Origin: Squalus acanthias
Taxonomy: Eukaryota
Assembly: GCA_030390025.1 (NCBI GenBank)
Contig: CM059427.1
Span: 188,852,001 to 188,916,000 of the forward strand
Length of the DNA stretch: 64,000 nt
Direction: 5' to 3'
Made by a program: the position numbers and the translations under genes. Of the stretch, positions 2,999-56,710 are shown one piece after another (position 1 is the first letter of the stretch; each line of letters begins with the position of its first letter). Below the pieces are notes generated by a model. The model ran no database searches, had not been told where the DNA came from, and was given only the letters and a program-made list of their open reading frames with translations.

Positions 2999-3001
2999 TA
3001 A

Positions 3002-9405: not shown

Positions 9406-9740
9406 CATAGCAACACTGGATGCAAGAAAAACCATTCTGCTGCTGGCATTTAGTCTTATTACAGTGGGCAGGAGGGGATTTAACATTTAAAAGATCTTTA
9501 CAGGAGTGTAATGGACCCAAAGATGTAAAAAAAAAATCTCCTCTTCAGCTCCTCTCTATTGCTTTGATTGTATAGTTTGATTTTTGATGTTATATTGTTT
9601 ATATGTGAACACCTATGACTGAACTCTGAGTAATGTGGAGAGCAATAGGATCTGAAAAGTAAGAGGTTATCATAACAAAAGAGCAGTGAGTGACAAGAAC
9701 TTTCTATGGAGGTTAAAAGTGAAAAACCTGAGACACTTAC

Positions 9741-10011
9741 TGTTAACCTTCAGATAATATGGAATTAAAACGCTGGGCGTGTTTTGATGAAACAAAACAC
9801 ATGTCCAGTTCCTTCTGTCTCTATCAGCTTTCTGAATAATCAGCCGTAACAAATCCTCTTCCTGGCTTTGGTCCTTAAAAGTTTTCTGTTCAACAGTTTT
9901 GCCATCAGCTACTGATCCAAACAAGTCTCATTGATTCAGTGACATCAGAGACAGAGCAGGTCAGGGTAACGGTGTCTCCCTCAGTCACTGCATCAGATGG
10001 TTCAGCTGTGA
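9741..10011 (-). CDS. Ig exon D8 (C2-type, WxC; +1 frameshift; paralogue of D4)
   Basis: 271 nt versus 270 in D4. Reads TGG ATC AGT AGC TGA versus D4 TGG ATC AAT AGT GAT. The shifted frame still encodes DGKTVEQKT..NWTCVLF. Confidence 0.85.
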
Positions 10012-13000
10012 CTGTAAACAAGAAAATCATTTAGATTTTAAACAATGTCCTGGAGTTTCCACTCGATTGCGTTGCTTTTATGGCGTATTTCGCTCGATAT
10101 TGGTGTAAACGGCGCAAACGATCGCGGAATTTTAAGTATAATTTGCGTTTAGCGCAACTCGAGTTTCCGCGATCTTTTGCGCTAGTTTTAAAAACATTGC
10201 GCTAGAAGCAGGCCCCGCCCGCAAAACTGTCCACGCCCACAAAACTGGGCCCGCCCACAAAACTGTCCACGCCCCCCGGGTGAATTAATCTCCATTTGGA
10301 GTTTCTGCTAATTGCGCCTGTTTGCAGGCCTTCGAGGAGGTTCCAAAAATTAACCTTGATCTTTTGGGCGCAAGGACACGGAAAGATTTTGCATGAACTT
10401 TTTAAAAAATTTACTAGGGAACTGACGACTGACTACCCAATCTAACTAGAAAATAGTTCTGTATATTTTTTAAAGTCGTTTTCAGTCATTTAAAATCGGT
10501 TACTCACAGGTGGCGGATCGATACTGTGATTTAAAATGCTTATTTTTTGTGATAAACCCATTTCCAGCTTTATTAAGCAAACTACACCAAGTTACCATTC
10601 TAAATATATCCAGGAACACTTTTTAAAGCAATTTTTTTTTTAATTACATTTTAAAACGCTGTCTATTTACACTGGTTCAGGGCAGATTTCGTCTTCGGTG
10701 ATATGCAAATGAGTTTGAGTGAAAACATGGAGAAAACAAACACTTTTCAAAACGGGTGGAATTTTGAGCGCAATTTGTGCCGGAATTGCCGATTGTGCCC
10801 AAAGCGGAAACTCTACCCAACTTTATCATTGAAAACACCTGGAGCATTCTGTCTCCTACCTTCAACTGTGATTAGTTTAATGGTCACATAATTCAATAAC
10901 CCCAGAGAACAAGTGTAAACTCCTGCATCTTCAAACAGCACAGGGACAATCCTCACACTGAAGTTCTTATCATTAAGATTTCCCACTGTGGGCACCAGTC
11001 GACTCCCAAAGTAGGTCCTGTTTACTTCGATAGGCTTGGATCTGAAAGTAGAAGCTATTTCTTTCTCTTGATTCTGAAAATGACGTGACCTCCAAGTCCA
11101 TTTAGTTTTAATGATCTCAGATTCAGCTTCACAAATCAGGGAGAGTTCACTGTGATCTGTGCCTGACCGATAAAGTGTGTAACTCTTATTGTGTAAATCT
11201 GAAATAGAGAGACAGGAAACAAGGTGTTAGATTTATATAGCTGCTGAGATACAGATGTTCTGAATTCCCACAGGGCCATTCAGCGCCCTCCTGGCATAAG
11301 CCAGCTGGGAGTGCAGCATTGGGACAGGGAAATCGGCTGGGACCCGGATACACTGGCTGCCGGCCCAGGCTGCCTATTGTTTAAACGCCGGGTTGTGCTA
11401 CAAAGTTCATCTGCTCCAAACATGGCCCCCGTCAAAGTGATGCTGTTTCCCCGTGGACTGTAGATAATCAATTTGTTAAACTGTCTCAGCAATCGATTGT
11501 CAATAAACGCCTCATACCCATTGTGTTGGGCACATCTGGTCCCCTCAGGTTGTTAACAGAAGGAGATAAAACAAAGAGAGACAGAAGCAAACAGGCAGGT
11601 CCATCAAAGAGTGAATAGTCACTCAGGCTTGAAACAAAAACTTGCAAGGGCAAGCTTGGGCCAGGCTCAGAAGTTCAACACGTAGGAGGGTAGTTAGGAG
11701 TTAATTTGGTCCAGTCAAATAGTTGACCCATTGGTTTGGAGCAGTGCAGCATGTTCATTATTTTGAACTGCTACACAAAGACAGGTTATACTGATTGAAC
11801 TAAGTGAATCTGATCATAATTGCTATTCTGTATGTTCACTTGCTGTGAACTAAAGCAGTTTAACAATTCATTACTGGCCTTGTCTCACCAAGGGTTTTTT
11901 CAAAATGACTAAAGCAGTATATGTGCGATAGACACAAATATCCAGTTCAGGTCACAAGGGAGTTGATTCTTACACCCCTAGACTATCTTATCATATAGTC
12001 AGATATTGGGCAGTATGAGAACATCACTAAATGTAAGACACTCAGGCCAGTTTTGTGAGTGAGCAGCACCACTGTACCCAAGAGAATGTCTCAGGAAAGA
12101 CCCGAATCTTGTAACACCTGTGTTGGGTTCATTTAATTTGTTTGTATTTCTCTATTCCAATATAGACTGGAATGGCAGTTGCTTTTTATAGATTGATGGA
12201 TTTTATTCATTTTGATTCATACAAGTGAATCGAAATTAATCCATTGAGTTCACCTGGTTGGTTACATCAGCTCTTAATGTCACCATTTTATATTTACACC
12301 CATGTTCCAGGGCAAAAACAAGGACCACATTCTGCAGTAAAAGCCCACAGTGGTGCCTGTGCTCGCTGTACTTTGTGTGTAACAGTTTTATATCAGTAAT
12401 TATTTAACACCTACTGCAAGCTAGCTCTGGACTTACTCTGATCCACATCAACATTTGTGTTTCCAGTGAGAACAATGGAGTCATTTTCCTGCACTTCCCA
12501 TGTGTACAAATTCTGATTTTCTGCTCCAACGTGTCTGACTATCAGATAGACCGTGTTATTCAGATGGATCTCATCAGTGTTGTTCCTCCTGTTCTGCTGA
12601 GATGAGTCTCTTGGTTTCCAGTGAAGACTGACTGTATCTGAAAGTCTGGAGATGGTACAACTGAGGGTGATGTCACTGCCCCTTACAGGCCTCTGTGAAT
12701 CTGTCTCAACTGTAAAAACAGATAAATGACATGTAATATAGTTTTCCTTAAATGGAAAGGGCTGAATCTGAACTCCCAAAAACGGATGGTTTCGGATCAT
12801 GTCAAAGGTTAAAAGGCAAGAAATCTGAAACAAGAACCCCACCCACCTCGCACCCGCCCACTTCCGGTTTTAACGGAGGTGGTAAGTGGTGCCAGGTGAC
12901 CAATCTGCTTGCAGGAAGCGAGTTGGTCGTTTTAATATTATAATGAGGCTGCTTGCCTTTATTTTATCAGTGATTCTATTTTTAACTCATTTCGGCCAGG

Positions 13001-25000: not shown

Positions 25001-28000
25001 TTGAGACGGGGCTGGGCCCATCAACGGAACTGTTCTGGACAATCATCCAACCTGTCGAACAATAGGGTGGCAGTTGAAGAACTGGCATCACACCATTACC
25101 GGCCATCTAGCATGATGGGCCGAGACCAGTACCTTTTGTTAAAATTCATCATGCCCAGATCAGACAATAGAAATGTGCTGATCGGTGGGAAGATTAGAGC
25201 GACCGGAGGGGGTATAAATGGAAAGACCCAGCCATTTTTTCTCGCTCTCTGCCTGGACCCTCGGTTCGCTCTGTCTGCCAGCAGCTAAGAAAGAAGACTA
25301 CCAGAAACTTCGGAGCCACGTGTCGATGGCAGAAACAGAGCACAGGGCCAGGTTTTTCCATCCATTTCACCGGCGAGCATTATCTTTCTTCTGGCTGTCG
25401 CAAGACAATTTTAGTTAGGCATAAGGGTGGGGATTAATGGGGATATTGCTAAAACTGTAATTTTAGGATTTTCCCTCGATGTGTCCGTTCTCTTCCCATG
25501 CTAAGTGTAAAACCGTTTCCAGATGATACTGTTTCTCTGTAGTTTTACTTCTGTAAATAAACATTGGTTTTCCTCGCACCAATCCACGAGTCTGTTCGTT
25601 TGTCTTTATCGCCGCTCGATAAGTCCTGGGCTCAGAACTAATAAAGGGGATAGCGATTCGCAACCGCATAGCGGGCGCAGGACAGTCCAGGAAAACATAA
25701 CTGGCTGACCTACAAATAAGCCCGAGACAAAAACCCCTTACAGTCCCCTCATCTAATTCATTGATATAGATTGTAAATAGCTGAGTCCGAAGCACAGATC
25801 CTTGCATTACCCCACTAGTTACAGCCTGACAACCCAACATGACCTGTTTATTCCTAGTCTCTGTTTTCTGTCTGTTAACCAATCCTCAGCCCTTGCTAAT
25901 ATATTACCCCCAATCCCATGAGCCCTAATTTTGTGTAATAACCTCTTGTGTGGCACCTTATCGAATACCTTCTGAAAATCCAAATACACCACATCCACTG
26001 GTTCCCCCTTATCTACTCCATCTGCTGCTTAAACTCTCATCAATTCTTTTGTCAGCTCCAGACTTGACTATTGCTGTTCTCTCCCTGACATCCTTCCACC
26101 TTCCTTGCACTGAAACTCAATTCATCCAAACATCATCTACCCATATCCTATCCGGCACCAAGTCCCTCTCACCCATCACTACATTGGCTACATTGACTCC
26201 TGGTCCTCCAACACCTCCAATATAAATTTCTCATTCCCCTGTATAAATCCTCATGGCCTCACCGCTCCCTATTTCTGTAACCTCCCCCAGCCCTACAACA
26301 CCTAAAGAACTCTCTGTTCCTCTGACTCTGGCCTCTTGTGCTAATTGCTAACAATTAAAATTACTAGCCCTGAGTGCATCCACTAGTTCTAATGCACAGA
26401 GGATTTTTACCCACCTGGCTGTTTTTAATGAGAGATTCATTCGGGGCTGAGTGATAGAACTGGAGGATCAGGACATGATCCCAACATTCTGTTAGGAATA
26501 TTCTATGATTCTATTCTATGAAACACAAGTTTGACATAACTTCCTGTTTTTTGTACTCTGTGCCTCTATTTATAAAGCCCAGGATCCCATATGCTTTATT
26601 AGCTGCTTTGTTAACCTGTCCTGTCACCTTTAAAGATTTGTGCACAAGTACCCGCAGGTTTATCTGTTCTTGCAGCCCTTTAAAATTGTACTATTGAGTG
26701 TGTTTCATCTCTCTTCATTCTTCCTACCAAAATGTATCACCTCACATTTTTCTGCGTAATTACTCACAGAAAATCATACTATTGAACCCTTTCTAGTCCT
26801 TGTCCCACTTACCTTTGACCCCAAATATTTCATACTGTTTCAGTATTTTCTTACTGGGCTGTGTCTGAGTCCAGGTGAACAATCCCGCAAGTTCAAAGGT
26901 GGGGTTTCTGATTCTCAGATTAAGGGTCCCCCAGTCCTCACGTATCCTCTGAGAAATTCCTGGTATATTATTGTACTCCTCGCTCCATTGTACCGCCCAC
27001 CGCTGATCTTCTCTGTGAAAAGTTCCCAATTGCTTTGCAGTTTGTTGCCCTGAATGTGGTCTCCATTCCCAGACAATGGAGCCATTTCCAGGATTGTCTG
27101 GGCCTTTCAATACAAAGCTGCCTTCCTGATGGAAAAAATAAATATAATTCTGGCTTCCTGCAAGAAAGGAGAACCGACATTTTAAAATCAGATAGCAACT
27201 TCTCAATCTGTCGACAATTTGTTTTCAGTAAGTTGTTAGTTATAATTCATTTCAGCAGCACATACACAATAAGGAGCTGTAGAGAAGAAAGTCACTTTCC
27301 TATCGATACACTTATTGTAATGGATTATTGTTTCTCAGACATTCTCCCAGCCCTCAAAGGTTCAACAAGAACAAAAACCTGTATTTATTCAGCACTTTTG
27401 ATGAAGAACACGTTCCAAGGCTCTTTACACAGAGGGGAAAAATAGGGAAAAGGATTAAAAGTCACCAAGCAGTGATGTGAAAATGAGGAGATATGACTGA
27501 ACATTTAAAAAATTTGATAGCAAAATACTGCAGATGCTGGAAATCCGTAATAACAACAGAAAACGCTGGAAAAACTCAGCAGGCGAGGCAGCATCCGTGG
27601 AGAGAGAAACAGAGTTAACGTTTCAGGTCAATGACCTTTCGTCAGAACTGGCGGTTCTGACGAAAGGTCATCGACCTGAAACGTTAACTCTGTTTCTCTC
27701 TCCACGGATGCTGCCTCGCCTGCTGAGTTTTTCCAGCGTTTTCTGTTGTTATTTAAAAAATGTGTTTGGAGAATGTTTTTAAAGGGGCACGGAGAAATGG
27801 AGAGGTGGAGATATTTAGTGGTAATTTCAGACTGTGGCTGAAGGCTGAAGACCAAAGGTAGTCGTGGGGGTTATGGGAAATGGTGGCGAGGGAGAGCTGG
27901 GGGTCCTCAACAAACATCTGGAAGTTGAACCCAGTGCCTGCGCATGATGTGACCAGGATAGATAAGGAAGAGGAAGGAAATATATATTTGGAAACAACCA

Positions 28001-31000
28001 GCTGCATTTTTCAACTTCATCTATTTTTTTTTGCTTTTCCACCGGTATCAAGTCTGTTCATACAACAAGGGCAGAGGAAAGCTCCAGAATTTAGTTGGAC
28101 TCTCTCACCCCACATAAGGTGGGAAGCAGATTCTGGACCATTTCACAGCATATCCCTGTTACCAAATACCCTGAACACCCCAGGGTCGCACACACTGCTT
28201 AGTGACCCTAGGAGTAGATGAGGAAGACATTTGCTGATCTCCCAAGGGTTGCTAAGGTAAGCGAGCTCATACTTTGCCTCATTTTACAATCTTTCCTTCC
28301 AATGCAGGCTATCAGCACTTCACTGCAAGCTTAATGGAGCATCAAGGTGGGAAATGCACAGCTCTCTGGCAACTGTTCACCCAATTTCCAAAAGCGCAGA
28401 AACATCGTAAAATCTAGCACACTGCCAACACAAGATATCTGCATACTGCGAGTTCACAGACTCACATAAGGTGGATGGTAGACTTGGATCTAGGGTGGCA
28501 TTGTCTCTGCTTTTCACAATTCCAGGATATGTCTCTTCTATATCAGCTTACAGAAGGCTGCACATTAACAGATTTGTACCTGAGGGGCCCTCCCAACCAG
28601 TGCTCACTGACTCTGAGAGCAAATTCAGCAATTCCACACTCCCAGTGTAATTTGCTTTGACAGCAAATTGAAAAAGCTGTTTCCCTTGGTTTCCCACCAC
28701 AAAATCAATCGGTCCGAATCCCCGTGAACATTTTCCCCCTTCCCATGATCTGCCCGTGGGGATCCAAAATGAGCTAATGAGGGCCAGTGACTCTGCATCC
28801 TCGAGTTTCCTGATCTTGCGCTCACAATGCACGAGCCCTCAGTTAGAATGAGAGTGATGAGGCTCCGATGTTTCCAGGATCAGCTGAGACAGGAAGAGAA
28901 GAAGAGTTTCTCTGAGCCTGAATAGTGGAGACTTTCAACTGCAATTTTTGCAGCTGGGGATTACCTTTTGCTGAGATTTATTTGGGCATTCTGCAGCCGC
29001 ATTCTGATTGATTCTTGGTCAGAAAACCAATGGAAACGGCTTGTGTACCATTTTACTATCAAATATAAATGCTTGCCGTGTCTCAGTGAGTTTACCAAGA
29101 GCGTAGTTGAGACATACAGAGCAGGAAAGGTCCAAGCTTGATCCCAGGCTGTGCCGAGTTATCTCAGGGTAGATTTTCTGAGGCTCTGCCCCACTGTAGA
29201 GCCTCACACACAGGATATAAAGGAGGGGCTACTTCTGGCAACAAGAACAATAAGTGACCAGAATTTTCTATCCAGATTATAAATATAAAGAGCAAACCCT
29301 GAGTCACTTACCACTGGGCTCCAGATAGTACGGGACTAAAACCCGGGGTCTGTTTTGATGAAACAAAGCACATATCCAGTTCCCTCTGCCTCTGTCAGCT
29401 TTCTGAATAATCAGTCTCAATGATTTCTCTTCCCCATTCTGTCCATTCCATGTTTTTTGTTCAACAGTTTTGCCATCACTATTGATCCAAACAAGTCTCA
29501 TAGATTTAGTGACATCAGAGACAGAGCAGGTCAGGGTAACGATGTCTCCCTCAGTCACTGCATCAGATGGTTCAGCTGTGACTGTGTAAACAAGAAAATC
29601 ATTTAGATTTCAAACAATGGCCCAGAAATTCACTTCTCCGGCTTGCCGCGGGGGTAAGGATCGCGCGTGCTCTTACCTACCGCGCCTGTCGTTTTGTTTT
29701 GGGCCCACGGGAACTTCGGGTCCTGGGCCTCTCCCTAGTGCCGGCGCGCAGTGCTTGTGTGTCCCAGGGGCGCAGTTAGTGCGATGCGACCCCTGGGATC
29801 ACGTGGGCCATGGAGAGCCAATGGCAGCAGACCATCTTTCATTCATAGATTTGACAGGAGACATGTCAAATCTATGAATACAAATTGCCCCGAAAAGAAC
29901 AGCTAAACTTAAAATAAATATTAAAAAAACCATCACATTTATAAAATAACTATAGTTAAATAAATTAACCACTTTAAACAAAAATTTAAATTTTTGAAAA
30001 ATTAAAATACTTTTTAAAAGTTATAAAAATAAACTTACCTTTCTTTAAAGTATCTAAAAAAGAATAACCTGTTGAAAAAAATTTAAAATTATACTTAATT
30101 AACCACTTACCTTGTTCAAAACGGGTCTTGCGCTTCCTTTTCATTAGCGTAGTATCTTCCATACTTAACCTCGCGTAGAACCCTGAAAAAAAATCTAAGT
30201 GTGCGGCGTGCGCGCAGCCTCTAGCACGCACGCGGTTCACCTAGGAACCACCCCCTTCACCATACCGGAAGTTCCGGTTTCCCACGCATGCGCAGTGCAT
30301 GCAGGAAACCGGCACTTCGGGAAGCAATACGGGTGAGTACACAGTCCGTACTCACCCGGGAAGGGCCGAATTTTTGGGCCAAAAACTTGATCATTGGAAA
30401 CAATGACAACATTCTGTCTCCTACCTTTAACTGTGATTAGTTTAATGGTCACCATGTTATATGATCCCAGAGAACTTGTGTAAACTCCTGCATCTTCAAA
30501 CAGCACAGGGACAATCCTCACACTGAAGTTCTTGCCGTTAAACTTTGTCTCTGTGGGCACCAGTCGACTCCCAAAGTAGGTCCTGTTTACATTGATGAGC
30601 TGAAATATTGAAGCAGATGCTATTTCTTCCTCCTGATTTTGAAGCTGATCTGACCTCCAGGTCCATGCAGCATGATTGTAAGAGTGAAGATAATTAATAT
30701 AATAACCATAGCAAATCAGGTCGAGTTCACTGTGATCTGTGCCTGACCGATAAAGTTTGTACCTCTTATCATATAAATCTGTAATAGAGAGACAGAGAAC
30801 AACGTGTTAGATTTTCACGGTTGTTGAGTTACAGAGAAAATAGAGAATAATTATTGGCCACAATCATATAAGCCTATTTTGTATTTTGATTATCATAATT
30901 TTATTTGATCAAGTTTTTGTCAAAGTTATAAACTGTTTAAAATATGTACAACTTGGGTTAATTCGATATTCATAAGGAAACAGAATTTTTTAAATGAAAC

Positions 31001-46000: not shown

Positions 46001-49000
46001 ATTACATTAATTAACTATTTTAAACAAAGACTTAAATTTTTGAAAAAATTAATTACACTTTTTAACGGGCTTAAAACTAAACTTAACTTTCTTTAAAGTA
46101 ATTTAAAAAGATAAATCTGTGAAAAAATTTTTTAAATTTTAATAAAATCAACACTTACCTTGTTAAAAGAAGGCCTTGCGCCTCCTTTTTCAATGTGTAT
46201 CTTTTCCGTGCTTACCCTCACGGAAGAACCTGTAAAAAAACCCGAAGTGCGAGGCGGACGCGCTGGCCCTCCGGCGTGCGTGTTCGACCTCTGAACCCCT
46301 TCCTTCAGGGGAACGGAAGTGCCGGTTCCCCGCGCATGCGCAGTGCATGCAAGAAACCGCCACTTTTGTTCCGTCCACAGGTGAGTACACAGCGCGTACT
46401 CACCCGTGGCGAGCCTAATTTCTGCCCCGTGGTTGTCCTGGATCACAGTGCTCTCCACATGCTGCAGTTGCGGAACACCGTCTGCACTGCCATGCCTATA
46501 TGACCTTGATTTATTTAATTACATTTTTTAAAATTTGTAATTAGGTAACTCAGTTTACAGTGTAGTTTCCTGACTACTTACTTGATCTAGATTAAGTTAA
46601 GGGCACTGAAATTAAATATCTACCTGCAACAAAAAGCATCTAAGTAGTGTAGGAAAAAGCAACAACTCCTTCCCTCCCTTCTCCAAATTCCCACTCTTTC
46701 CAAATTTCCAACCAAAGCACTCTGTTCAAGTCCACTCTATTTAATCCCACTCTGTGCAGACCGCATGACTCTAAGCATGACGTGCTGATGGTTGACATGA
46801 ATGACCACTTTATATGTAACAGTTTTATATTAGTAAATCTTTACTATCTACTGTGAGGTAACTGCACTTACATTGGTCCACAGAAAAATCTGCTTTTCCA
46901 GTGAGAATAATGGATCCAGCTTCCTGCACTTCACACGCGTACAACTCCTTATCCTCTACTGCAACATGTTTGACTATCAGATAGACTGTGTTATTTAGTC
47001 GGATCTGATCAGTGTTGCTCCTGTTCTGCTGAGTTGACTCTCTCTTTTTCCATTGAAGACTGACTGTATCTGAGAGTTTGGAGATGGTACAGCTGAGTGT
47101 AACGTCACTGCCCACCAAAGGCTGCTGTGGACTTGACTCAACTATGAAAAACAGATCAATAAGATTTTGTGTAAGTAGTGACATGTACAATCCAACAATT
47201 AGGTTCTAACTGACCATAGGATGTGCCCATCATCAGCACTTGTATCTTGCTGTATTAAAGAGTCAGGCCAGATTACACACAAGTGCATTTTAGCAGTAGA
47301 ATAACACAGTGGGCCTGAAAATTCTAAGTCCTGCTCCACCAGCGTAATTGAGGCAGAGCAGCACTGGTGACCTTTACCCCTAATCCTGTGGGGTCAGGTT
47401 AAGGTTACATGGTTTGGATGACATTTGGGGAAGCCGACACCACAATGGACAGGTGATGGAATCTCACCAGAGGAGGGTGTGATGGAAATGTAGCGCCCAT
47501 ATTATCAGACATGGAGAAGGCTCCAGTCCCACTCTGTTCTCAATGTGCCTCGCACACTTCAGTAAGACCACCCAACACACGCACTGGGAGCCTGTGCACA
47601 AAATCCACGTCAAAAGTCATTACGTTATTTAAATGAGTGGGCTCCCAAAATGCTCCTGAGCAGGGCTCCAATCATTGAGCGTCCATGAGGAATGGCACTT
47701 CAGGAGAGGCTTGTTCTAAAAATGCCCACCCTGACTTTCAGTCCCACCTACAACATGACAAGTAAGAATCAAATCTTCAACAGGGACTTTAATTCCAATG
47801 TCAGGCCAAAACAATGGTGGCATCCATTAGCTGCTGGAGCCCAACACTCTGGTGCCCGACCCATGTGACATTCCCCGTGTACCACGCACTATGTACCATG
47901 AGTGCCACTAACAAATGTAAATGAGTTGACTTTCTATTATGGTCAACTCATTCTGGTGCAGTTTGGGCCAACACCTCAGGAGCAATGGTCCAGGCCCAGT
48001 ACAGTCACGATCATATTTTGGCCACTACGACATTTCAGGATTGGATTATAATTTGTATCAAGTACATTTGACAGTAACCTCAGCCTCATTTAGATGTTAC
48101 ACACATCAACCAACCAGAAAGTGTAGCTGTTGAGCAGCATCCTTAGTTGGCAGCAACTAAAGATTTTGATTTATTTATACTAAAGTTTTTTTAATGTTTT
48201 TGAGTAGATACAATGGCCAGAATCTTAATTTTTTTTTATTTGCTTATGGGATCTCGGCATCGCTGGCAAGGCCAGCTTTTATTGCCCATCCTTAGTTGCC
48301 CTTGAGAAGGTGGTGGTGAGCTGCCTTCTTGAACCGCTGCAGTCCGTGTGGTGAAAGTACTCCCACAGTGCTGTTAGGGAGGGAGTTCAAGGAATTTGTC
48401 CCAGTGACGATGAAGGATCGCCAATATACTTCTAAATCAGGATTGTGTGTGACTTGGAGTGGATCTTGGAGGTAGTGGTGTTTCCATGCGCCTGCTGCCC
48501 TTGTCCTTCTAGGTGGAAGAGGTTTCGGGTTTGGGAGGTGCTGCTAAAGAAGCCTTGGCGAATTGCTGCAGTGCATCTTGTACATGGTACACACTGCAGC
48601 CACGGTACGCTGGTGGTGCATGGAGTGAATGTTTAAGGTGGTGGATGGGGTGCCAATCAAATGGGCTGCTTTGTCCTGGATAGTGTCGAGCTTCTTGAGT
48701 GTTGTTGGAGCTGCATTCATCCAGGCAAGTGGAGAGTAGTCCATCACAGTCCTTACTTGTGCCTTGTAGATGGTGGAAAGGCTTTGGAGGCAGATAGGGA
48801 GTGGCGAGACCGAATTTAGCGATAGGGCCTGATCAACATTTAAAATCTCTGTTACCCGCCTGCAGCCAGGCAAAAGGAATGGTTTGAATGTAAAGGCCTG
48901 GGGCACCAGGCCACAGAGAGGAGGGAGTGAGGGACTGGTGGGGTTGTCAGAAGGCAGGAGTGGGGTATCGGAGGTCCGAGTTTGGAGATCCGAAGGCCAG

Positions 49001-52000
49001 AGGGGAGAGATCGGACGGCCAGAGTTCGGAAGTCGGAAGGCCAGAGGGTGTATCGGAGGAGGGCTGGAAAACTGCAGGGGAGAATTCGGAAGGCCGAAGA
49101 GGGAATTGGAGATCAGAGAGAGGTCGGAAGGCCGGAGGGGAGGTCAGAAGGCTGGAGGGGTGATCAGAGATCGGAGGTCTCGTGGGGGGGTGTCGGAGGC
49201 CCCAGGGTGAGTTTGGGGGGAGATCGGAAGGGTCGGGGGTGGGGTGTCCGATCGTGGGTGGGTGGCGAGGCAGAAACCCTGGATCCAGCAGTCCTCGTCA
49301 CCCTTTAGCTGGCGGTTTCCCCGAGCCCTCAGTTAAATTTAAAATGGTGGATCACTATGAGGCACCCAATCTCATTATAATATATAAAGTGCAAACTCAC
49401 CTCCTGCGAGCAGATTAGCTGCCCCCCCCACCCCCGTCCCACCTCCGTTAAAACCAGAAGTGGGCGGGTTGGAGGCAAGTTGGGGCCAGGATTCAGATTT
49501 TTAACTCTGTAACCTCCCACCCGACCCCAAGCCAAACCTTTTTTGGGGTTAAATATCCCACCAATGTATCTCTTTTTCTCTGCCATGTTCTTCTTGCTTT
49601 CCTGAAGGCGTTAACTCCTTATCATAGGATGAGTTCTAGGGACACTTGACATCCTCTGGGACCTCAACCAAGTGACACATCTAACAGGTTCACTGGACAG
49701 TAATCAGGAACAGTGATTCTGGCCAATCTTATTCCTGTCCCATCGCGCTGAGGCTTTTTACTACAAGGGATCTATTGGTTTGGTAACAGAATTCAGTACA
49801 TCTGACAGAGAGTGTGCCAGTGTACAGACCATAATACTCTCTGTGGGGTAGATTTTTGGGTTTGCTATTTCTGGTGAAATTGTCGAAAAGTTTTTACTCA
49901 TGTTGACCATTTCAGGAGAAACAATGAACAAAATCTTTCCCCTGGTTGTTTTAATGAGAGATGCTCTCTGCACTGGGTGATATAAATCTCACATGATCCT
50001 GGCAATCTCTCATCATTACACATGAAATTATTTACGGAGAATCATTTTATTGTTCCTTTTCTAGACTTTGTCCCACTCACCTTTGATCCCATATATTTCA
50101 TACCGTTTCAGGATTTTATTTCTCGGCTGTGTTTGAGTCAAGATGAACGATCCCGCACATTTAAACGTGGGTTTTCTAATTCTCAGATTAATGGTCCAAT
50201 AATTCCATTCTATCTTCTGGTACAAGTCGCTGTTTCTATAGTGATCGCTCCATTGTGCGTCCCACCAGCCCGAACTCCCTTTGTGTAAAGTAACCAGTCG
50301 CTGGATTTCTTGCCCTGAGTGTGGTTTCCATTCCCAGACAACAGGGCCATTCCCAGGATTGTCCGGTCCTTTTAATGGAATGTCATCTCCCTCATCCAAA
50401 AAATAAATATGATTTGGGTTTCCTGTTAGAAAGAGGAACAATGTAAGTATTTAAATATTTAAATTGCAACTCCTTAATCCCATGATTTTAATGATTAATA
50501 TCGGAGTTCATCTATTTACTATCTATGGGAACCTGAGCATACATTCAGAAGAGAGAGAAGAAAAGCTGGAAATAGAAGGCAGAAAATTACTAAGCGAGTT
50601 TGGATGGCAGTGGAAACAAAGGCTTGGAAATGGGCAACAAAGGATTTGGCAGTGCTTGCTGGTAAATCCTTCAATGCAAGGAGTCCAGTGAATAAGGCAG
50701 ATGAGCTGAGGGCACAGATAGACATAGATATCATAGCTATTACTGAAACATGGCTTAAAGAAGGGCAGGAATGGTAACTCAACATTCTTGGTTATACAGC
50801 TTTCAGACAAATATTAACTGGGATAGAATCAGTGTAAAAGGTATAGAGGGTGCAGAATTTTTAAAATGCATTCAGAAGATCTTTTTATCCAGCACGTAGC
50901 TAGCCCAACAAGAGAGTTCTGGACTAAGTTTTAGGGAATGAAGCTGGGCAGGTGGAAGGGGATCAGTGGGGGAGAATTTTGGTGGTAGTGATCATAATTC
51001 AGTTAGATTTAACGTAGTTATGAAAAGGGACAAAGATAGACCAGGAGTAAAAGTTCTCAATTGGAGAAAGGCCAATTTACTAAGCTGAGATGTGATTTAG
51101 CAAAAATGGAAACAGCTACTTGAAGGTAAATCAGTGTCAGAGTACTGGGAGGCATTCAAAGAGGAGATAGTCAGGATTCAGTGCAAATATGTTCCCACAA
51201 AGAAAAAGGGCGGGACTCCCAAATCTAAAGCTCCCTGGATGTCAAGGAGCATACAAGGTAGGATAAGGAAAAAAAGGAAGCTTATGTCAGATAAGCTCAA
51301 TACTGCAGAAAGCCCAGAGGAGTATAGAAAGTGCAGGGGTGAAATTAAAAAATAAATTAGGAAAGCAAAGAGAGGGCATGAAAAACTATTGGCAAGTAAA
51401 ATCAAAGGAGAAACCCAAAGATGTTTTAGAGTAAGAGAATAACTAAGGAAAGAGTAGGGCCTAATAGAGACTAAAAATGGTAACCTATGTGTGGTGACGG
51501 AAGATGTTGGTATGTTTCTTAATAAACTTTGTGTCTGTCTTCACAAAAGGGAGGGCCGATGCAGATATTTTAGTTAAGGAGGAGGAGTGTGAAATGTTAG
51601 ATGGGATAAAATAGTGAGAGAGGAAATATTAAGGGGCTTAGCATCTTTGAAAATAGATAAATCACCACGCCCGGATGAAATGTATTCCAGGCTGTTAAGA
51701 GAAGAATGTGAGGAATTAGCGGAAGTTCTGACCATCATTTCCCAAACCTCTCTGGCTACAGTCATGGTGCTGGAGGACTGCTAACATTGTACCGTTGTTT
51801 AAAAAGGGAGAAAGGGATAGTCTGAGCAATTACAGACCAATCAGCCTAACCTCGGTGGGGGGAAATTATTAGAAAAAAATTATTTAGAAAGGCCCAGATT
51901 AATCAAGGAGAGTCAGTGTGGATTTGTTGAGGGAAGGTCCTATCTGACTAACTTGCTTAAATTTTTTGAGGAGGTAACAAGGAGGTTCAATGAGGGTAGC

Positions 52001-55000: not shown

Positions 55001-56688
55001 AAAGTGGGATTCGGTCGGATCGCTCTTTTTCAGCCGGCACAGATACGATAGGTCGAATGGCCTCCTTCTTTGCCGTAAATTTCTATTATTCTCTGATTCT
55101 ATGGTTTACAGTCATATTTTTACATTTAGCTGATCATGTTGCCTTCACTTCAGGCACTATTACAGAGAAAAACAGAACAATTCCATTACATTCAGTTTAT
55201 CTATTATAGAGTTATCAGAACATTCATCATTACTACAAAAAATAATCAAAATTAAGAGAGAGGACATGGTTAATTCCAGGTTACAGTGAATAAAAGCTCC
55301 AAATCTCCTCGTGACTCCTGGTCCACAGGGGGCATTATCAGGGTGGACAGGATCTCAGGGAGAGAAATTGGGGCAGGATACGGTTATGTCGGGTTTTCAC
55401 CCCACTTGTCCTGTGACGGGGTTTCCCGAGGTTGGCGGGGATCAGATGGTTCCTGGTCTGCACCCTCTTGTCTGAAAAGACACCGTGACAGAGAAAAATT
55501 AGCTCTTGGAAACTGAGTTGCAGCCTCTTTCCACCAGGTGTTTTGCCTTATCTGTGAAAGGTGACAACTGTGGCTGTGACGGTAATGAATGCATTTATGC
55601 GAATGCATTCCGATACTTCCAGGTGGCCACTGGTGACATTGGGCCCATCATTCAGTCAATAGTTCATTGCTACCATTCACTGAACTGCATTTTCACGTAC
55701 ATTCATTCCAAGGATATCAGTTAAGTAACAGTCATTAGATACTCAAGGATAACTGTAAAATCCTCATTGTAACTATCATTTTATCTACATTTTCATAAGG
55801 AAACTTAGCTAAAGCAGTAAATCTCATGTATCTGTGATTCTAGATTAAACAGCAATTCACATCACAATTACCAAAAACACAATGGCACCGTGTACACTGT
55901 ATTCGCAGTAAAGTTTAAACACAAAGTTTGGACTCTAAACTAGAATTACACAGAATTTATAGCACAGAAACAGGCCATCAGCACAACCGGTCTATGCTGC
56001 CCACCTACTCAGACAACGAGGGGGCAGACACAGGAACCACCTGATATCCGCCCACCTCGGGAAACCCCGTCACAGGACAAATATTATCGAGTTTCCCCTT
56101 GAATGCATCGATGCTAATCACCTCAACTACTCCCTGTGGTAGCAAGTCCACATTCCAACCACTCTCTGGGCAAAAAAGTTGCTCCTGAATTCCTTAATGG
56201 ATTTATTCGTGACAATTTTATATTTATGACCCCTAGTTTTGAACTCCCCCACAAGTGGAAACATCTTCTCTAAGTCTACCCTGTCAAACCCCTTCATAAT
56301 CTTAAAGAACTCTATTAGGTCACCCTTTGCTATATGCAAGAGTAGATGGATAGATGGATGGATAGAGTTATAGATGGATCGGGAAAGGGAGTTGAAGAGC
56401 AATGAGAAATATGCTAATATTTTTCATTTTATTAAGTTGCTCCATTGTTGCAATCTGAAAAGTGAAATCACACATCCTGTTTAAAGGAGCAGGGACATGA
56501 AATTAAAGACTTGCTTGCTGAATACTAGCTGGGTGCATTCATTAAACTCGATGATAAAGTAAAACAATATGAATGTGATTGGTAGAAATAAGGCACTTAC
56601 TTTGTGTGAAAACAGACGGAAGTAGAAACACAAAGAAACTGATCATCAAACCAGCTGGCATTTTGCTGCAGAAAAATCGTAGCTTCAT
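9741..56688 (-). CDS. Multi-exon Ig-superfamily gene: leader plus (V-C2-V-C2)x2, CD4/LAG-3-related; 3' end not found; D8 frameshifted
   Basis: Nine exons with AG/GT sites and phase-1 junctions. The spliced frame is open for 795 codons up to TGA at 9907-9905. WxC in D4 and D8. Pairwise homology D1/D5, D2/D6, D3/D7, D4/D8. Confidence 0.8.
10047..10818. mobile_element. MITE-like insertion in the D7-D8 intron
   Basis: Imperfect inverted ends (..GGAGTTTCC / GGAAACTCT..), CpG-rich ends, AT-rich core. Interrupts homology with the D3-D4 intron. Confidence 0.6.
10860..11198 (-). CDS. Ig exon D7 (V-type, canonical C-W-C; paralogue of D3)
   Basis: 339 nt, atttcag acceptor and gtagga donor. Encodes ELSLICEAESEIIKTKWTW..EDAGVYTCSLG. 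Confidence 0.9.
12437..12709 (-). CDS. Ig exon D6 (C2-type; F-strand Cys replaced by Trp; paralogue of D2)
   Basis: 273 nt, ttttacag acceptor and gtaagt donor. Encodes GSDITLSCTIS..LHWKP..NLYTWEVQE. Confidence 0.9.
12759..15300 (+). mobile_element. Interspersed repeat (family 4) carrying an expanded minisatellite
   Basis: Shares CCCGCCCACTTCCGGTTTTAAC, CCAATCTGCT and AGGTRAGTGCCTT blocks with 16380, 32464 and the reverse copy at 48810-49560. Confidence 0.65.
13230..15030. repeat. Minisatellite (CCGATCACCATCTACACCCCC)n, about 21-25 bp unit with variable C-run
   Basis: Directly visible tandem array of about 1.8 kb, interspersed with shorter CCGATCACCCC units. Confidence 0.97.
15520..16376. 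mobile_element. PIF/Harbinger-like MITE, family 2
   Basis: Ends GGGGGAGAAATT...AATTTTTCCCCC, 3-bp duplication (CAT or ATG), highly similar to 41049-41907. Confidence 0.75.
16380..17090 (+). mobile_element. Interspersed repeat family 4 copy
   Basis: Homologous to 12759-13230 and 32464-32878, with a short degenerate CCGATC region. Confidence 0.6.
17230..17388 (+). mobile_element. L2-type LINE fragment, continuing at about 22763-22875 after the CR1 insertion
   Basis: NFLxxNIxKTEAIxF-like RT C-terminal motif. TCTCAG is duplicated at both CR1 ends. Confidence 0.55.
17389..22762 (-). mobile_element. Near full-length CR1 LINE (5' monomers, ORF1 zinc finger/leucine zipper/esterase, ORF2 APE-RT, internal deletion near the 3' end)
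   Basis: ORF1 MAGQLTPVECTAC..C..C, IVIGDSIVRG and DGLLLN. ORF2 YFNARSIVNK, ITETWL, DFSKAFD, GVPQGSVLGP. Split by a nested CR1. Confidence 0.88.
20233..21954 (-). mobile_element. 5'-truncated CR1 nested in ORF1 of the outer CR1
   Basis: RT ORFs 21235-21702, 20917-21231, 20321-20938 with FADDTK. The host sequence CCTGGTCCTC|CTCTTCTGTCTG rejoins across it (compare 44616-44637). Confidence 0.88.
22459..22768 (-). repeat. 4 x 76-bp tandem monomers at the CR1 5' end
   Basis: Units start at 22459, 22535, 22611, 22687 (next boundary 22763). Each contains GATATAAAGA on the CR1 sense strand. Confidence 0.9.
23107..23216. mobile_element. 110-bp hAT-like MITE
   Basis: TIRs CAACATTCCCTTTAA / TTAAAGGGAACATTG, imperfect 8-bp TSD TTCACAGC/TTCACCAC. 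Confidence 0.7.
23749..24002 (+). mobile_element. 5'-truncated DeuSINE-like (SacSINE1-like) SINE
   Basis: Contains GCTTGCTGTGCGCAAATTGGCTGCCGC, recalled from shark DeuSINEs, and an L2-like tail ..GCGATAGAAATGCAAGTC(TTTC)n. Confidence 0.6.
24194..24710 (+). mobile_element. L2 LINE 3' end
   Basis: HISPVLxxLHWLPVxQRIDFK-type coding and LWNSLP, tail GCGCTATATAAATGCAAG(TTG)n. Confidence 0.8.
24748..25742 (+). mobile_element. Solo LTR (family C)
   Basis: TGAAAGGATTCGC...AAACCCTTACA, TSD GTCCC on both sides, TATAAA near 25214, AATAAA near 25556. Host CR1 rejoins across it. Confidence 0.8.
26030..26345 (+). mobile_element. Old L2 fragment
   Basis: Similar to 24194-24430 (CACCAAGTCC..CACCCATC, CTCTGTAACCTCC..CAGCCC). 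Confidence 0.6.
26500..26757 (-). mobile_element. CR1 RT fragment
   Basis: Reverse strand encodes CEVIHFG..SLKVTGQVNK..AYGILGFI-like text. Confidence 0.65.
26813..27157 (-). CDS. Ig exon D5 (V-like, no cysteines; paralogue of D1)
   Basis: 345 nt, cttgcag acceptor and gtaagt donor. Encodes FVLKGPDNPGNGSIVWEWRP..NLRIRNPTFELAGLFTWTQ. Confidence 0.88.
27549..27753. repeat. Near-perfect 205-bp palindrome (about 100-bp arms, 5-nt spacer)
   Basis: AATAACAACAG..TCAGAAC tggcg GTTCTGA..CTGTTGTTATT. The ORF track shows the same peptide on both strands. Confidence 0.92.
29312..29581 (-). CDS. Ig exon D4 (C2-type, WxC motif)
   Basis: 270 nt, acacag acceptor and gtaagt donor. Encodes EGDIVTLTCSVS..LVWIN..GNWICALF. 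Confidence 0.9.
29619..30380. mobile_element. PIF/Harbinger-like MITE, family 1
   Basis: TIRs GGCCCAGAAATTC / GAATTTTTGGGCC, three internal palindromes, five copies in the window. Confidence 0.8.
30425..30778 (-). CDS. Ig exon D3 (V-type; F-strand Cys replaced by Ser)
   Basis: 354 nt, ttacag acceptor and gtagga donor. Encodes ELDLICYGYYINYLHSYNHAAWTW..NFSVRIVPVLFEDAGVYTSSLG. Confidence 0.9.
31167..31916. mobile_element. MITE family 1 (inverted relative to 29619)
   Basis: GGGGTCAGAAATTC..GAATTTCTGGCCC, same internal blocks. Confidence 0.8.
32464..34940 (+). mobile_element. Family 4 repeat split by a young CR1
   Basis: 5' part 32464-32878. CCGATCT-rich part resumes at about 34803-34940. Confidence 0.55.
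32880..34802 (+). mobile_element. Young 5'-truncated CR1 with uninterrupted RT ORF (32984-34705, 573 aa)
   Basis: KSPGPD, NYRPVSLTS, DFQKAFD, GVPQGS, FADDTK without stops, (CTATGTAT) tail. Confidence 0.95.
35230..35385 (+). mobile_element. CR1 extreme 3' fragment
   Basis: Reverse complement of 20240-20390, CTCTATGA tail. Confidence 0.7.
35992..36085 (-). pseudogene. Decayed 3' half of a third D2/D6-type exon
   Basis: Translates FGVEDKNLHLCEV* versus D2 VAVEDKELYACEVQ, ends GATGTGGATCAG like D6, donor changed GT to AT. Adjacent intron 35780-35990 aligns with 12230-12436. Confidence 0.7.
38883..40519 (+). mobile_element. AT-rich solo LTR-like insertion (family D)
   Basis: TGTGAAGGAATA...TATCCCTTCA, imperfect TSD TTCC/TTAC, internal direct repeat of about 180 bp (39225-39570), AATAAA near 40158 and 40187. 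Host CR1 APE rejoins. Confidence 0.6.
41030..45180 (-). mobile_element. Internally deleted CR1 nested in ORF1 of the outer CR1
   Basis: ORF1 43975-44880, APE 42881-43908, RT C-terminus 42390-42581, 3' (ACTCTATG) tail near 41030. Confidence 0.82.
41049..41907. mobile_element. MITE family 2 copy inserted in the CR1 tail
   Basis: GGCGGAAAAATTC..GAATTTTTACCCC, TSD ATA. Confidence 0.78.
45667..46428. mobile_element. MITE family 1 copy inside CR1 ORF1
   Basis: GCGGCCAGAAATTC..AATTTCTGCCCC, shared palindromes. Confidence 0.8.
46872..47141 (-). CDS. Ig exon D2 (C2-type)
   Basis: 270 nt, ttcatag acceptor and gtaagt donor. Encodes GSDVTLSCTIS..LQWKK..EDKELYACEV. Confidence 0.9.
47311..47745. mobile_element. 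Possible old Harbinger-like MITE
   Basis: GGGCCTGAAAATT..GACTTTCAGTCCC imperfect TIR only. Confidence 0.3.
48228..48790 (-). mobile_element. LINE 3' fragment (CR1/L2-group, distinct family)
   Basis: LSTIYKAQVRTVMDYSPLAW..LDTIQDKA RT C-terminal motif, A-rich tail on the minus strand. Confidence 0.7.
48810..49560 (-). mobile_element. Family 4 repeat, reverse copy with degenerate GATCGG tandem region
   Basis: GTTAAAACCAGAAGTGGGCGGG is the reverse complement of the family core. GATCGGAGG repeats at 48960-49255. Confidence 0.6.
50081..50422 (-). CDS. Ig exon D1 (V-like, lacks both canonical cysteines)
   Basis: 342 nt, ctaacag acceptor and gtgagt donor. Encodes NPNHIYFLDEGDDIPLKGP..VVWEWKP..NLRIRKPTFKCAGSFILTQ. 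Paralogue of D5. Confidence 0.85.
53068..54961. mobile_element. GC-rich Harbinger-like MITE (related to family 2), itself split by a young CR1
   Basis: GGGG...AATTTCTCCCCC with TSD TAA (53065-53067, 54962-54964). Confidence 0.7.
53279..54470 (-). mobile_element. Young 5'-truncated CR1 with open RT ORF (352 aa)
   Basis: GVPQGSVLGP and FADDTK, no stops, (CTATGT)n tail at 53279-53300. Confidence 0.93.
55940..56330 (-). mobile_element. CR1 3' fragment
   Basis: KGDLIEFFKIMKGFDRVD..TRGHKYKI..NFFAQRVV. Confidence 0.75.
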
Positions 56689-56710
56689 TTCACAGATTCC
56701 GTCTCTTTCC
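56601..56710 (-). CDS. Leader (signal peptide) exon, ATG at 56688: MKLRFFCSKMPAGLMISFFVFLLPSVFTQ
   Basis: Acceptor tttcttacag, donor A|gtaagt in phase 1, hydrophobic core. Joins in frame to D1. Confidence 0.75.

What the first reader, a model, noticed from the sequence alone, without database searches (positions are those of the whole stretch)
9741..56710. Eight-domain (V-C2-V-C2)x2 Ig gene with CD4/LAG-3-type WxC domains, hidden among transposons
Seen: a leader and eight phase-1 Ig exons splice in frame, with D1~D5, D2~D6, D3~D7, D4~D8 and homologous flanking intron sequence, so a whole four-domain block was duplicated inside the gene. Known: V-C2-V-C2 architecture with an F-strand WxC is the hallmark of CD4 and LAG-3, which have four domains and a D1 split by an intron. 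Inference: this is not orthodox CD4 or LAG-3 (double length, unsplit V exons) but a related, possibly undescribed, extended immune receptor of cartilaginous fish. D3-D6 (V, WxC-C2, disulfide-less V, C2) resembles the CD4 D1-D4 order, so the module may be a permuted CD4-like unit.
Basis: partly seen in the sequence, partly recalled or inferred. Interest (0 to 1): 0.85.

Follow-up and report, generated by a model that had tools for sequence, protein, structure and literature searches.

The report
Eight-Ig shark receptor gene, CD4/LAG-3-like
This is the front part of a shark immune-receptor gene with eight antibody-like domains, one member of a large unnamed gene family whose nearest known relatives are the T-cell molecules LAG-3 and CD4; in this copy a one-letter insertion breaks the last domain.

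Summary
The leader and eight phase-1 Ig exons are real, on the minus strand, at the stated coordinates. D1~D5, D2~D6, D3~D7 and D4~D8 hold. One claim fails: D8 is 271 nt, with an extra base at 9908 that shifts the frame into a TGA.

Contigs of four public runs join D4 directly to D5 at GT..AG, so the two blocks form one transcription unit.

The gene belongs to a family listed only as "uncharacterized protein" in about 20 cartilaginous fishes, plus bichir, sturgeon, paddlefish, bowfin and eel. The family is built from a four-domain cassette a-b-c-d. Members have one cassette (50) or two (25). Tails carry either ITIMs or a transmembrane lysine. Second-cassette domains form their own clades across sharks and rays, so the doubling is ancient.

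LAG-3 and then CD4 are the closest solved structures, by family profile and by Foldseek. However, WxC occurs in only one of the two C2 types, and the CD4 and LAG-3 tail motifs are absent. It is CD4/LAG-3-like, not a member.

This scan noted the same family elsewhere in this genome. No TM or tail exon lies in the window.

The parts
56601..56688 (-). Leader exon (ATG to phase-1 donor, 29 codons plus 1 base)
   Evidence: tblastn matches the N-termini of 6 of 9 family proteins at 45-65% identity.
50081..50422 (-). D1, type a: V-set fold without the canonical disulfide
   Evidence: No Pfam hit. 75% identical to Pristiophorus a1 domains. Falls among first-cassette a domains in the tree.
46872..47141 (-). 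D2, type b: Ig domain with B- and F-strand Cys (YxC)
   Evidence: Ig_2/Ig_3/I-set. F-strand column checked.
30425..30778 (-). D3, type c: V domain. The F-strand Cys is replaced by Ser in this assembly (codon at 30476-30474).
   Evidence: Cys in 98 of 98 family c domains. Contigs of all 4 runs read the Cys codon at 30476; X2 is mixed.
29312..29581 (-). D4, type d: C2-like domain with F-strand WxC
   Evidence: Spliced to D3 and to D5 in contigs.
26813..27157 (-). D5, type a (second cassette): V-set fold without the disulfide
   Evidence: AlphaFold2 pLDDT 92.3. Foldseek top hit is the 2B4 V domain. In the a2 clade with 24 of 24 a2 domains.
12437..12709 (-). D6, type b (second cassette): F-strand Cys replaced by Trp, as in 23 of 25 b2 domains
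   Evidence: starred clade, 98.
10860..11198 (-). D7, type c (second cassette): V domain with both Cys
   Evidence: starred clade, 98.
9741..10011 (-). D8, type d (second cassette): WxC domain broken by one extra base at 9908, with TGA at 9907-9905
   Evidence: The two pieces are 94% and 83% identical to d2 of Heptranchias P0066.
35932..36087 (-). Relic of the 3' half of a b-type exon in the D2-D3 intron, with a stop and a lost donor
   Evidence: 75.9% to the D6 region over 249 nt; sequence read; weak tblastn, E 0.14.

Best explanation
The window holds the leader and all eight ectodomain exons of one gene. It belongs to a fish multigene family of type-I Ig receptors built from a four-domain cassette a-b-c-d: a is a V-like domain without a disulfide, b an Ig/C2 domain, c a V domain, and d a C2 domain with F-strand WxC. 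This gene has the doubled form (a-b-c-d)x2, an architecture older than the shark-ray split. It is transcribed and spliced as one unit. Shown: the exon structure, the family membership, the D2-D3-D4-D5 splicing in near-identical transcripts, the V-set fold of D5, and LAG-3/CD4 as the nearest solved relatives. Inferred: the protein is a long rod whose fast-evolving N-terminal D1 binds ligand. By analogy with its closest eight-domain relatives, it continues beyond window position 1 into a stalk/TM exon and a tail with ITIMs that would recruit SH2 phosphatases. It would be paired in the genome with four-domain relatives whose TM lysine couples to an adaptor. In this assembly the extra base in D8 stops the frame. 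This copy therefore gives a truncated product, a D8-skipped seven-domain isoform (skipping keeps phase 1-1), or nothing. It is CD4/LAG-3-like in shape and in its d domain, but it is not a member of the CD4/LAG-3 pair.
For: Exons, phases and the D8 defect. Colinear tblastn: every window exon best matches its positional counterpart in the eight-domain proteins P0066 and P0063 (D4 88%, D5 87%, D8 pieces 94%/83%). Family: a D1+D5 profile finds only 40 of 1.84 billion representatives at E<=0.001. 19 of the 20 I looked up are fish 'uncharacterized/hypothetical' proteins. 116 of 119 hits of a family profile are chondrichthyan. Bichir, paddlefish and sturgeon relatives appear. Architecture: 50 a-b-c-d and 25 a-b-c-d-a-b-c-d among 162 fetched proteins. 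Of the eight-domain forms, 16 of 25 have ITIM tails and 1 of 25 has a TM lysine. Of the four-domain forms, 14 of 50 have a TM lysine and 15 of 50 have ITIM tails. One unit: the joint 27156->29311 (CT..AC, i.e. GT..AG on the minus strand) is seen in 4 of 4 runs, and one 512-nt contig spans 328 nt of D5 plus 184 nt of D4. The D3->D4 joint is seen in 2 of 4 runs, and a loose end at 30778 equals the end of D2. Ancient doubling: the second-cassette clades hold a2 24/24 plus D5 (support 87), b2 24/25 plus D6 (98, starred) and c2 24/25 plus D7 (98, starred). Signature residues agree: b2 has Trp in 23/25, and a2 has Trp in 24/24 where a1 has Leu in 24/24. Cassette origin as (V-C2)x2: hhalign gives a~c 91.6% and b~d 91.5%, with all other pairs at 17% or less. 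LAG-3/CD4: the family profile against PDB puts LAG-3 first (E 8.4e-13, two stretches, WxC aligned) and CD4 at 2.6e-6. A d-only profile's best full-length single-domain match is LAG-3 D2 (E 8.6e-6). Foldseek with the AlphaFold2 model of the nearest four-domain relative, P0007, ranks LAG-3 at 1-2 and CD4 at 3, 4, 6, 8 and 9.
Against: The runs are contigs whose RNA status is a guess. The contigs differ from the window by 1-3%, and the differences are shared between runs, so they may come from a close paralogue, another individual or a sister species rather than this locus. One contig in X2 joins D4 to something else not present in the window. D8 is out of frame, and D3 has Ser where 98 of 98 relatives have Cys, so this copy may be dying. 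No TM or tail exon is in the window, so the signalling type is only inferred. The LAG-3 link is modest. In one search, pIgR (42.7 bits) and titin (40.9 bits) score higher in a single stretch than either LAG-3 stretch (26 and 23 bits). The window's own c-domain profile finds MXRA8, VNAR and sodium-channel beta-2, not CD4/LAG-3. Pfam's CD4-type C2-set (PF05790) matches 3 of 38 members, below its cut-off. Foldseek may favour LAG-3/CD4 simply because they are the solved V-C2-V-C2 rods.
Confidence: 0.75

Rival explanations
1. This copy is a pseudogene or decaying member. The D8 frameshift is real and no functional receptor is made here. The transcripts seen come from an intact paralogue or allele.
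For: The extra base at 9908 is not in a homopolymer, and a TGA follows directly. D3 has Ser where 98 of 98 relatives have Cys. Contigs of all 4 runs carry the Cys codon at 30476 and differ from the window by 1-3%. A relic b-type exon lies in the D2-D3 intron.
Against: D1 to D7 are all open with intact splice sites. The D8 pieces are no more diverged from orthologues than the other exons (83-94%). In X2 the window's own base at 30476 has about 314 of 434.5 depth units. Exon skipping is common in the family (a-b-c-d-a-b-c and a-b-c-d-a-b-d forms).
Confidence: 0.35
2. The resemblance to CD4/LAG-3 is generic Ig similarity plus a chance WxC. The family is an independent IgSF lineage of paired receptors.
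For: Per-domain E-values are only about 1e-5. Other domains resemble pIgR, titin, JAML, MXRA8 or 2B4 more. WxC is in the d domain only. CxC/CxH occurs in 0 of 25 and 1 of 50 tails, and [FY]xxL[DE] in 1 of 25 and 1 of 50. No hit is named CD4 or LAG-3 among the 119 and 12 hits.
Against: LAG-3 is first of 177,635 PDB sequences with the family profile, with WxC aligned to both LAG-3 D2 and D4. LAG-3 D2 is the best full-length single-domain match of the d profile. LAG-3 and CD4 take 7 of the first 9 Foldseek ranks. The cassette shows the same internal (V-C2)x2 signal proposed for CD4/LAG-3.
Confidence: 0.4
3. D1-D4 and D5-D8 are two neighbouring genes, or a gene plus a leaderless partial copy.
For: One X2 contig joins D4 to sequence that is not D5. 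Translated in phase by eye, it begins like the stalk/TM exon of inhibitory family members. Four-domain members are common.
Against: The D4->D5 joint is seen in 4 of 4 runs. No leader, TM or tail exon lies in the 2.1-kb D4-D5 intron. 25 relatives have the eight-domain order. D5-D8 carry second-cassette signatures.
Confidence: 0.04
4. The family is one already described under another name: skate MDIR or fish DICP.
For: From recall of its abstract only, MDIR is a skate multigene family with four Ig domain subfamilies, one to six domains, a charged TM or ITIMs. DICPs come as D1-D2 or D1a-D2a-D1b-D2b with inhibitory and activating forms.
Against: No hit among the 119 and 12 carries an MDIR or DICP name, although skates and bowfin are represented. 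DICP D1 and D2 both keep the two canonical cysteines plus extra ones, while the a domain has none. MDIR domains are said to resemble CD300/TREM/pIgR (PMC3031540), which my searches did not show for a, b or d. The MDIR paper was not held, so this is untested at the sequence level.
Confidence: 0.1

Closest known systems
LAG-3 and CD4 (the CD4/LAG-3 family)
   Same: The V-C2-V-C2 order of one cassette, and an F-strand WxC in a C2 domain (d, i.e. D4/D8). One V domain lacks the disulfide. One phase-1 exon encodes each domain, without a split D1, as in shark CD4 and LAG-3. They are the top solved relatives by profile and by fold. There is an internal (V-C2)x2 signal.
   Different: WxC is absent from the other C2 type (b). 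The ectodomain is doubled to eight domains. This is a multigene family, not single genes. Tails carry ITIMs or a TM lysine instead of Cx(C/H) or (F/Y)xxL(D/E). Sequence similarity is marginal outside the d domain.
Predicted eight-Ig 'uncharacterized proteins' of other elasmobranchs (Heptranchias perlo P0066, Heterodontus francisci P0063, Pristiophorus japonicus P0077/P0073, Mobula birostris P0004; nurse shark V9NJF3 'obscurin-like' P0069)
   Same: The same leader and the same a-b-c-d-a-b-c-d order. The same cassette-specific residues. 75-97% identity per exon to the best of them.
   Different: Those models continue into a stalk/TM exon and an ITIM tail. The window stops after D8, D8 is frameshifted and D3 lacks its Cys. 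None has been studied experimentally as far as my searches show.
Paired activating/inhibitory Ig receptor families (KIR/LILR, NITR, DICP, MDIR)
   Same: The family logic: tandem multigene clusters, ITIM tails versus a charged TM residue, modular gain and loss of Ig exons, and a fast-evolving distal domain (DICP).
   Different: The domain types are different: a disulfide-less V plus a WxC C2. No hit carries those names. Distribution is cartilaginous fish plus early-branching ray-finned fish and eel.
CD2/SLAM family N-terminal V domain (2B4/CD244)
   Same: It is the best Foldseek match of the D5 model (E 1.1e-6, TM 0.73) and is likewise a V domain without the canonical disulfide.
   Different: 12-17% identity. 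No SLAM or CD2 entry is among the PDB sequence hits shown. The margin over MPZL1, nectin and CAR is small.

Membership tests
CD4/LAG-3 family (as defined in PMC10768021) | Four Ig-like domains in V-C2-V-C2 order | tested here: met
   Met per cassette. a~c and b~d by hhalign. D5 is a V-set fold. The four-domain relative P0007 aligns over about 420 columns with LAG-3 and CD4. This gene has two such cassettes.
CD4/LAG-3 family (as defined in PMC10768021) | [quoted passage not shown] | tested here: not met
   WxC is in d domains only: D4 and D8, with Trp in 90 of 96 family d domains. b domains have YxC (b1), or Trp in place of Cys in 23 of 25 b2 domains.
CD4/LAG-3 family (as defined in PMC10768021) | Tail motif Cx(C/H) (CD4) or (F/Y)xxL(D/E) (LAG-3) | not testable with these tools
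   No tail exon is in the window. In relatives, CxC/CxH occurs in 0 of 25 eight-domain and 1 of 50 four-domain tails, and [FY]xxL[DE] in 1 of 25 and 1 of 50.
CD4/LAG-3 family (as defined in PMC10768021) | One gene each, LAG-3 and CD4 head to tail in conserved synteny | not testable with these tools
   The window holds only this gene. Unchecked scan notes report many such genes over more than 2 Mb. Database species carry many paralogues.
CD4/LAG-3 family (as defined in PMC10768021) | Sequence similarity above other IgSF families | tested here: inconclusive
   LAG-3 is first with the family profile (8.4e-13), but through two 23-26-bit stretches. The d-only profile gives LAG-3 D2 at 8.6e-6. The c-only profile gives none. 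Pfam PF05790 matches 3 of 38 members.
Unnamed a-b-c-d cassette family of cartilaginous and early ray-finned fishes | The a-type domain (no Pfam match, no disulfide, conserved WEW and AG-F motifs), found in only 40 database clusters | tested here: met
   D1 and D5 built the profile. Hits reach 1.2e-159. D1 is 75% and D5 90% identical to the best relatives.
Unnamed a-b-c-d cassette family of cartilaginous and early ray-finned fishes | Order leader-a-b-c-d(-a-b-c-d) with cassette-specific residues | tested here: met
   Colinear tblastn, column statistics and second-cassette clades.
Unnamed a-b-c-d cassette family of cartilaginous and early ray-finned fishes | Stalk/TM exon followed by an ITIM tail, or a TM lysine | not testable with these tools
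   Nothing found in window 1-9741. It presumably lies beyond position 1.
DICP | D1 and D2 each with the canonical Cys pair plus DICP-specific cysteines (preprint 10.1101/2021.06.11.448072) | tested here: not met
   The a domains lack the canonical pair. No DICP-named hit. There was no direct alignment with DICP sequences.
MDIR (skate) | Domain subfamilies resembling CD300/TREM/pIgR (PMC3031540 passages; Cannon 2006 recalled only) | not tested
   The paper was not held. No MDIR-named hit among 119 chondrichthyan-dominated hits.
CD2/SLAM family | N-terminal disulfide-less V followed by C2, with sequence similarity to family members | tested here: inconclusive
   Foldseek's top hit for D5 is 2B4. 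There is no sequence-level hit.

The most novel reading that the evidence does not exclude
The a-b-c-d family is a third, multigene branch of the CD4/LAG-3 lineage. It survives in cartilaginous fish, bichir, sturgeon, paddlefish, bowfin and eel. It would be an innate-style set of paired inhibitory/activating receptors sharing a V-C2(WxC) ancestor with the MHC class II co-receptors. The cassette may be a circular permutation, since c-d-a-b reproduces the CD4 D1-D4 disulfide pattern. The ancient eight-domain form would be the intermediate that made such a permutation possible.
Probability: 0.3. Interest if true: 0.85.

Novelty: new variant of a known kind. Interest (0 to 1): 0.6.

Why it matters
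Sharks have no described counterpart of the KIR/LILR/NITR-type paired receptors, and CD4 and LAG-3 are thought to be single genes without further relatives. This family is large, old and conserved, with inhibitory and adaptor-type members. Its ectodomain is closest to LAG-3/CD4. If the relationship holds, it gives a testable route to two questions: how the MHC class II co-receptors arose, and what cartilaginous fish use as NK-like or myeloid paired receptors. The family sits in public annotation under 'uncharacterized protein', so it can be studied at once. This particular copy adds a case of a possibly dying or exon-skipping member.

Tried and rejected
TM or tail exons in the window. A hydrophobicity scan of minus-strand frames in 1-9741 and in the D4-D5 intron gave nothing convincing. 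tblastn with 9 family proteins found no match to any stalk, TM or tail residues. Region 1-9741 holds retroelement ORFs on the plus strand.

Two genes. Rejected on the D4->D5 joints and on the eight-domain relatives.

Permuted D3-D6 unit. Not supported as the natural unit. Kept only as part of the novel case.

Single-exon PDB searches gave only weak generic Ig hits, or none. D7: JAML and VNAR. D4: CD276, PD-1, KIT, and LAG-3 at E 0.03. D1+D5: nothing meaningful. D3+D7: MXRA8 and VNAR.

Pfam gives only generic Ig families, and nothing at all for D1/D5.

Papers. Searches found no paper describing this family. I saw passages and the whole of section 3.2 of PMC10768021, passages of preprint 10.1101/2021.06.11.448072 and passages of PMC3031540. 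Cannon et al. 2006 (MDIR) and Cannon et al. 2010 were not held, so what I say of MDIR beyond PMC3031540 is recalled. I asked for no supplements. The supplementary alignments of PMC10768021 might hold further CD4/LAG-3-like shark sequences that bear on novelty.

Not done. Exons were searched one by one, and database relatives (P0007 and others) served as full-length proxies. No direct comparison was made with CD4, LAG-3, DICP or MDIR sequences, because none was available from a tool as a usable id.
Full report
What is there. On the minus strand lie a leader exon (56688-56601) and eight Ig-sized exons: D1 50422-50081, D2 47141-46872, D3 30778-30425, D4 29581-29312, D5 27157-26813, D6 12709-12437, D7 11198-10860 and D8 10011-9741. 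Each is bounded by AG and GT and is phase 1 at both ends. Seven have lengths divisible by three and are open. D8 is 271 nt. Aligned with D4, it has one extra base at window 9908, not in a homopolymer, and the frame then meets TGA at 9907-9905. Another note of this scan had already seen the insertion.

The pairing of the two blocks is real. D1/D5 are 50% identical, D3/D7 68% and D2/D6 65% at the protein level. The DNA is 75-82% identical, and the matches reach only about 17-60 nt into the introns. The introns are filled with LINE fragments (RVT_1 in 3 ORFs, an endonuclease and a GDSL-type esterase among 9 ORFs scanned) and a 1.9-kb minisatellite.

One gene or two. I laid the contigs of four public runs on 26500-31000 (two studies; RNA status is only the index's guess). 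All four contain a joint 27156->29311 with CT..AC ends, which is the GT..AG intron between D4 and D5 on the minus strand. One 512-nt contig carries 328 nt of D5 and 184 nt of D4. The D3->D4 joint (29581->30425) is in 2 of 4 runs, and loose ends at 29583 in three runs read the end of D3. A 79-letter loose end at 30778 reads the end of D2. Intron bins between 27859 and 29217 have depth 0-8, against hundreds to thousands over the exons. The blocks are therefore spliced together.

There are caveats. The contigs differ from the window by 1-3%, and the differences are shared between runs, so they may stem from a close paralogue, another individual or a sister species. One X2 contig joins D4 to other sequence that is not in the window. 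Read in phase by eye, that sequence begins like the stalk/TM exon of inhibitory family members. It is either a four-domain isoform or a paralogue.

What family. Pfam sees generic Ig domains in D2, D4 and D6, a weak V-set in D3 and D7, and nothing in D1 or D5.

A D1+D5 profile against 1.84 billion representatives finds only 40 proteins at E<=0.001. Of the 20 I looked up, 19 are 'uncharacterized' or 'hypothetical' proteins of fishes. These are sharks, rays and a chimaera, plus sturgeons, bowfin and eel. The twentieth is a metagenome protein without family domains.

A profile of ten four-domain relatives finds 119 proteins. 116 are chondrichthyan family members from about 20 species. None is named CD4, LAG-3, DICP or MDIR. 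The few names are 'obscurin-like', 'VCAM1-like' and 'CD276 homolog'. A profile of the bony-fish members adds paddlefish and bichir.

I built four HMMs from the window's own exons (a = D1/D5, b = D2/D6, c = D3/D7, d = D4). With these, the 162 fetched proteins resolve into a modular cassette. 50 are a-b-c-d and 25 are a-b-c-d-a-b-c-d, with variants lacking single domains. Tails are of two kinds. One is a TM segment with a lysine and a short tail. The other is an uncharged TM with a long tail carrying ITIM-type tyrosines. Eight-domain forms are mostly the latter (16 of 25 with ITIMs, 1 with a TM lysine, 5 other, 3 truncated models). Four-domain forms are mixed (14 TM lysine, 15 ITIM, 15 other, 6 short).

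The window's exons match their positional counterparts in the eight-domain proteins of Heptranchias and Heterodontus, and several Pristiophorus proteins, at 75-97%. The species is therefore probably a squalomorph shark not itself in the protein set. tblastn with nine relatives finds only the leader, D1-D8 and a decayed b-type half-exon at 36087-35932. It finds no TM or tail exon.

Age of the doubling. In domain trees the second-cassette domains cluster apart from first-cassette ones. All 24 a2 domains plus D5 form one group (support 87). 24 of 25 b2 plus D6, and 24 of 25 c2 plus D7, form starred groups (98). Each group mixes sharks and batoids. The d tree is unresolved. Cassette-specific residues agree. 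Trp replaces the F-strand Cys in 23 of 25 b2 domains, as in D6. a2 has Trp in 24 of 24 where a1 has Leu in 24 of 24, as in D5 and D1. D6's missing disulfide is thus a conserved trait, not decay, and the block was not duplicated within this gene. It is an inherited architecture older than the shark-ray split. First-cassette a domains have longer branches than a2, which fits a variable, ligand-facing tip.

Signs of damage in this copy. Besides D8, D3 has Ser where all 98 family c domains examined have Cys. At that codon (30476), contigs of all four runs read the Cys codon. In X2 the window's base is also present.

Relation to CD4/LAG-3. In favour:
- hhalign between the family's domain alignments gives a~c (91.6%) and b~d (91.5%), and 17% or less for the other four pairs. 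The cassette is therefore itself (V-C2)x2, the origin proposed for CD4/LAG-3 (PMC10768021).
- An AlphaFold2 model of D5 (pLDDT 92.3) is a V-set fold. Its best match is the disulfide-less V domain of 2B4.
- The ten-sequence family profile ranks LAG-3 first among 177,635 PDB sequences (E 8.4e-13). Two stretches align the end of c plus all of d to LAG-3 D1-D2 and D3-D4, with WxC on WxC. CD4 follows at 2.6e-6.
- A d-only profile has LAG-3 D2 as its best full-length single-domain match (8.6e-6).
- Foldseek with the model of the nearest four-domain relative, P0007 (pLDDT 82.7), puts LAG-3 at ranks 1-2 and CD4 at 3, 4, 6, 8 and 9 of 350,542 chains.

Against:
- In one search, pIgR and titin score higher per stretch than LAG-3 does.
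- The window's own c profile finds no CD4 or LAG-3.
- Pfam's CD4-type C2-set model matches 3 of 38 members, below threshold.
- WxC is in d only.
- The CD4 and LAG-3 tail motifs are essentially absent from relatives.
- Foldseek may simply reward the shared V-C2-V-C2 order.

I conclude that the gene is CD4/LAG-3-like in architecture and in its d domain. It fails the family's own motif definition and should not be filed as a member. A true but distant kinship has odds of about one in two.

How it most likely works. This is inferred from relatives. The protein is a type-I membrane rod of eight Ig domains. It binds ligand at the variable distal end and signals through tail ITIMs. It is paired in the cluster with four-domain, TM-lysine relatives that would use an adaptor chain. 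In this assembly the D8 insertion would truncate the product, unless D8 is skipped (phase 1-1 is preserved, and seven-domain relatives exist) or the base is an assembly error.

Novelty. I found no paper on the family in six searches. MDIR could not be checked, because the paper is not held. DICP fails on its cysteine definition. The proteins are in public annotation, unnamed. This scan has noted the same family at eight or more other places of this genome. I did not check those notes.

Noticed in passing
window 35932-36087 (-): Decayed 3' half of a third b-type (D2/D6-like) exon in the D2-D3 intron. It is 75.9% identical to the D6 region over 249 nt, has an in-frame stop, and its donor GT is lost.
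   Followed up: partly
window 13163-15076: A minisatellite of about 1.9 kb made of C-rich units of 21-22 nt (about 85 copies), just upstream of D6. It reads as a spurious 694-aa proline/histidine ORF on the plus strand and produces the strong negative GC skew there.
   Followed up: partly
window 9909-10011 vs 29479-29581: The first 103 nt of D4 and D8 are 96.1% identical (99/103), against 76.6% (128/167) for the rest. D3/D7 likewise have a 50-nt block at 100%. This points to gene conversion or very strong constraint on framework parts.
   Followed up: partly
window 30590-30712 (D3, B-C loop to C' region): Contigs in X1 and X2 match both flanks at 95% or more, but the stretch between is replaced ('skips 121, between: not known'). 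A paralogue or allele appears to differ mainly in the CDR-like part of this V domain.
   Followed up: no
window 27406-27858 (D4-D5 intron): A short repeat with contig depth of 10,000-140,000 in all four runs, far above the exons. It is probably an abundant SINE-like or otherwise highly expressed repeat.
   Followed up: no
window 3000-7700 (+): ORFs of a retroelement downstream of D8, including one with a CCHC zinc-knuckle-like stretch. There was no Pfam hit at E<=0.001 for the three ORFs tried.
   Followed up: partly
window 29310 (end of D4), run X2: An 87-letter loose end joins D4 to sequence absent from the window. Read in phase by eye, it starts like the stalk/TM exon of inhibitory family members. 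It is either a four-domain isoform or a paralogue.
   Followed up: partly
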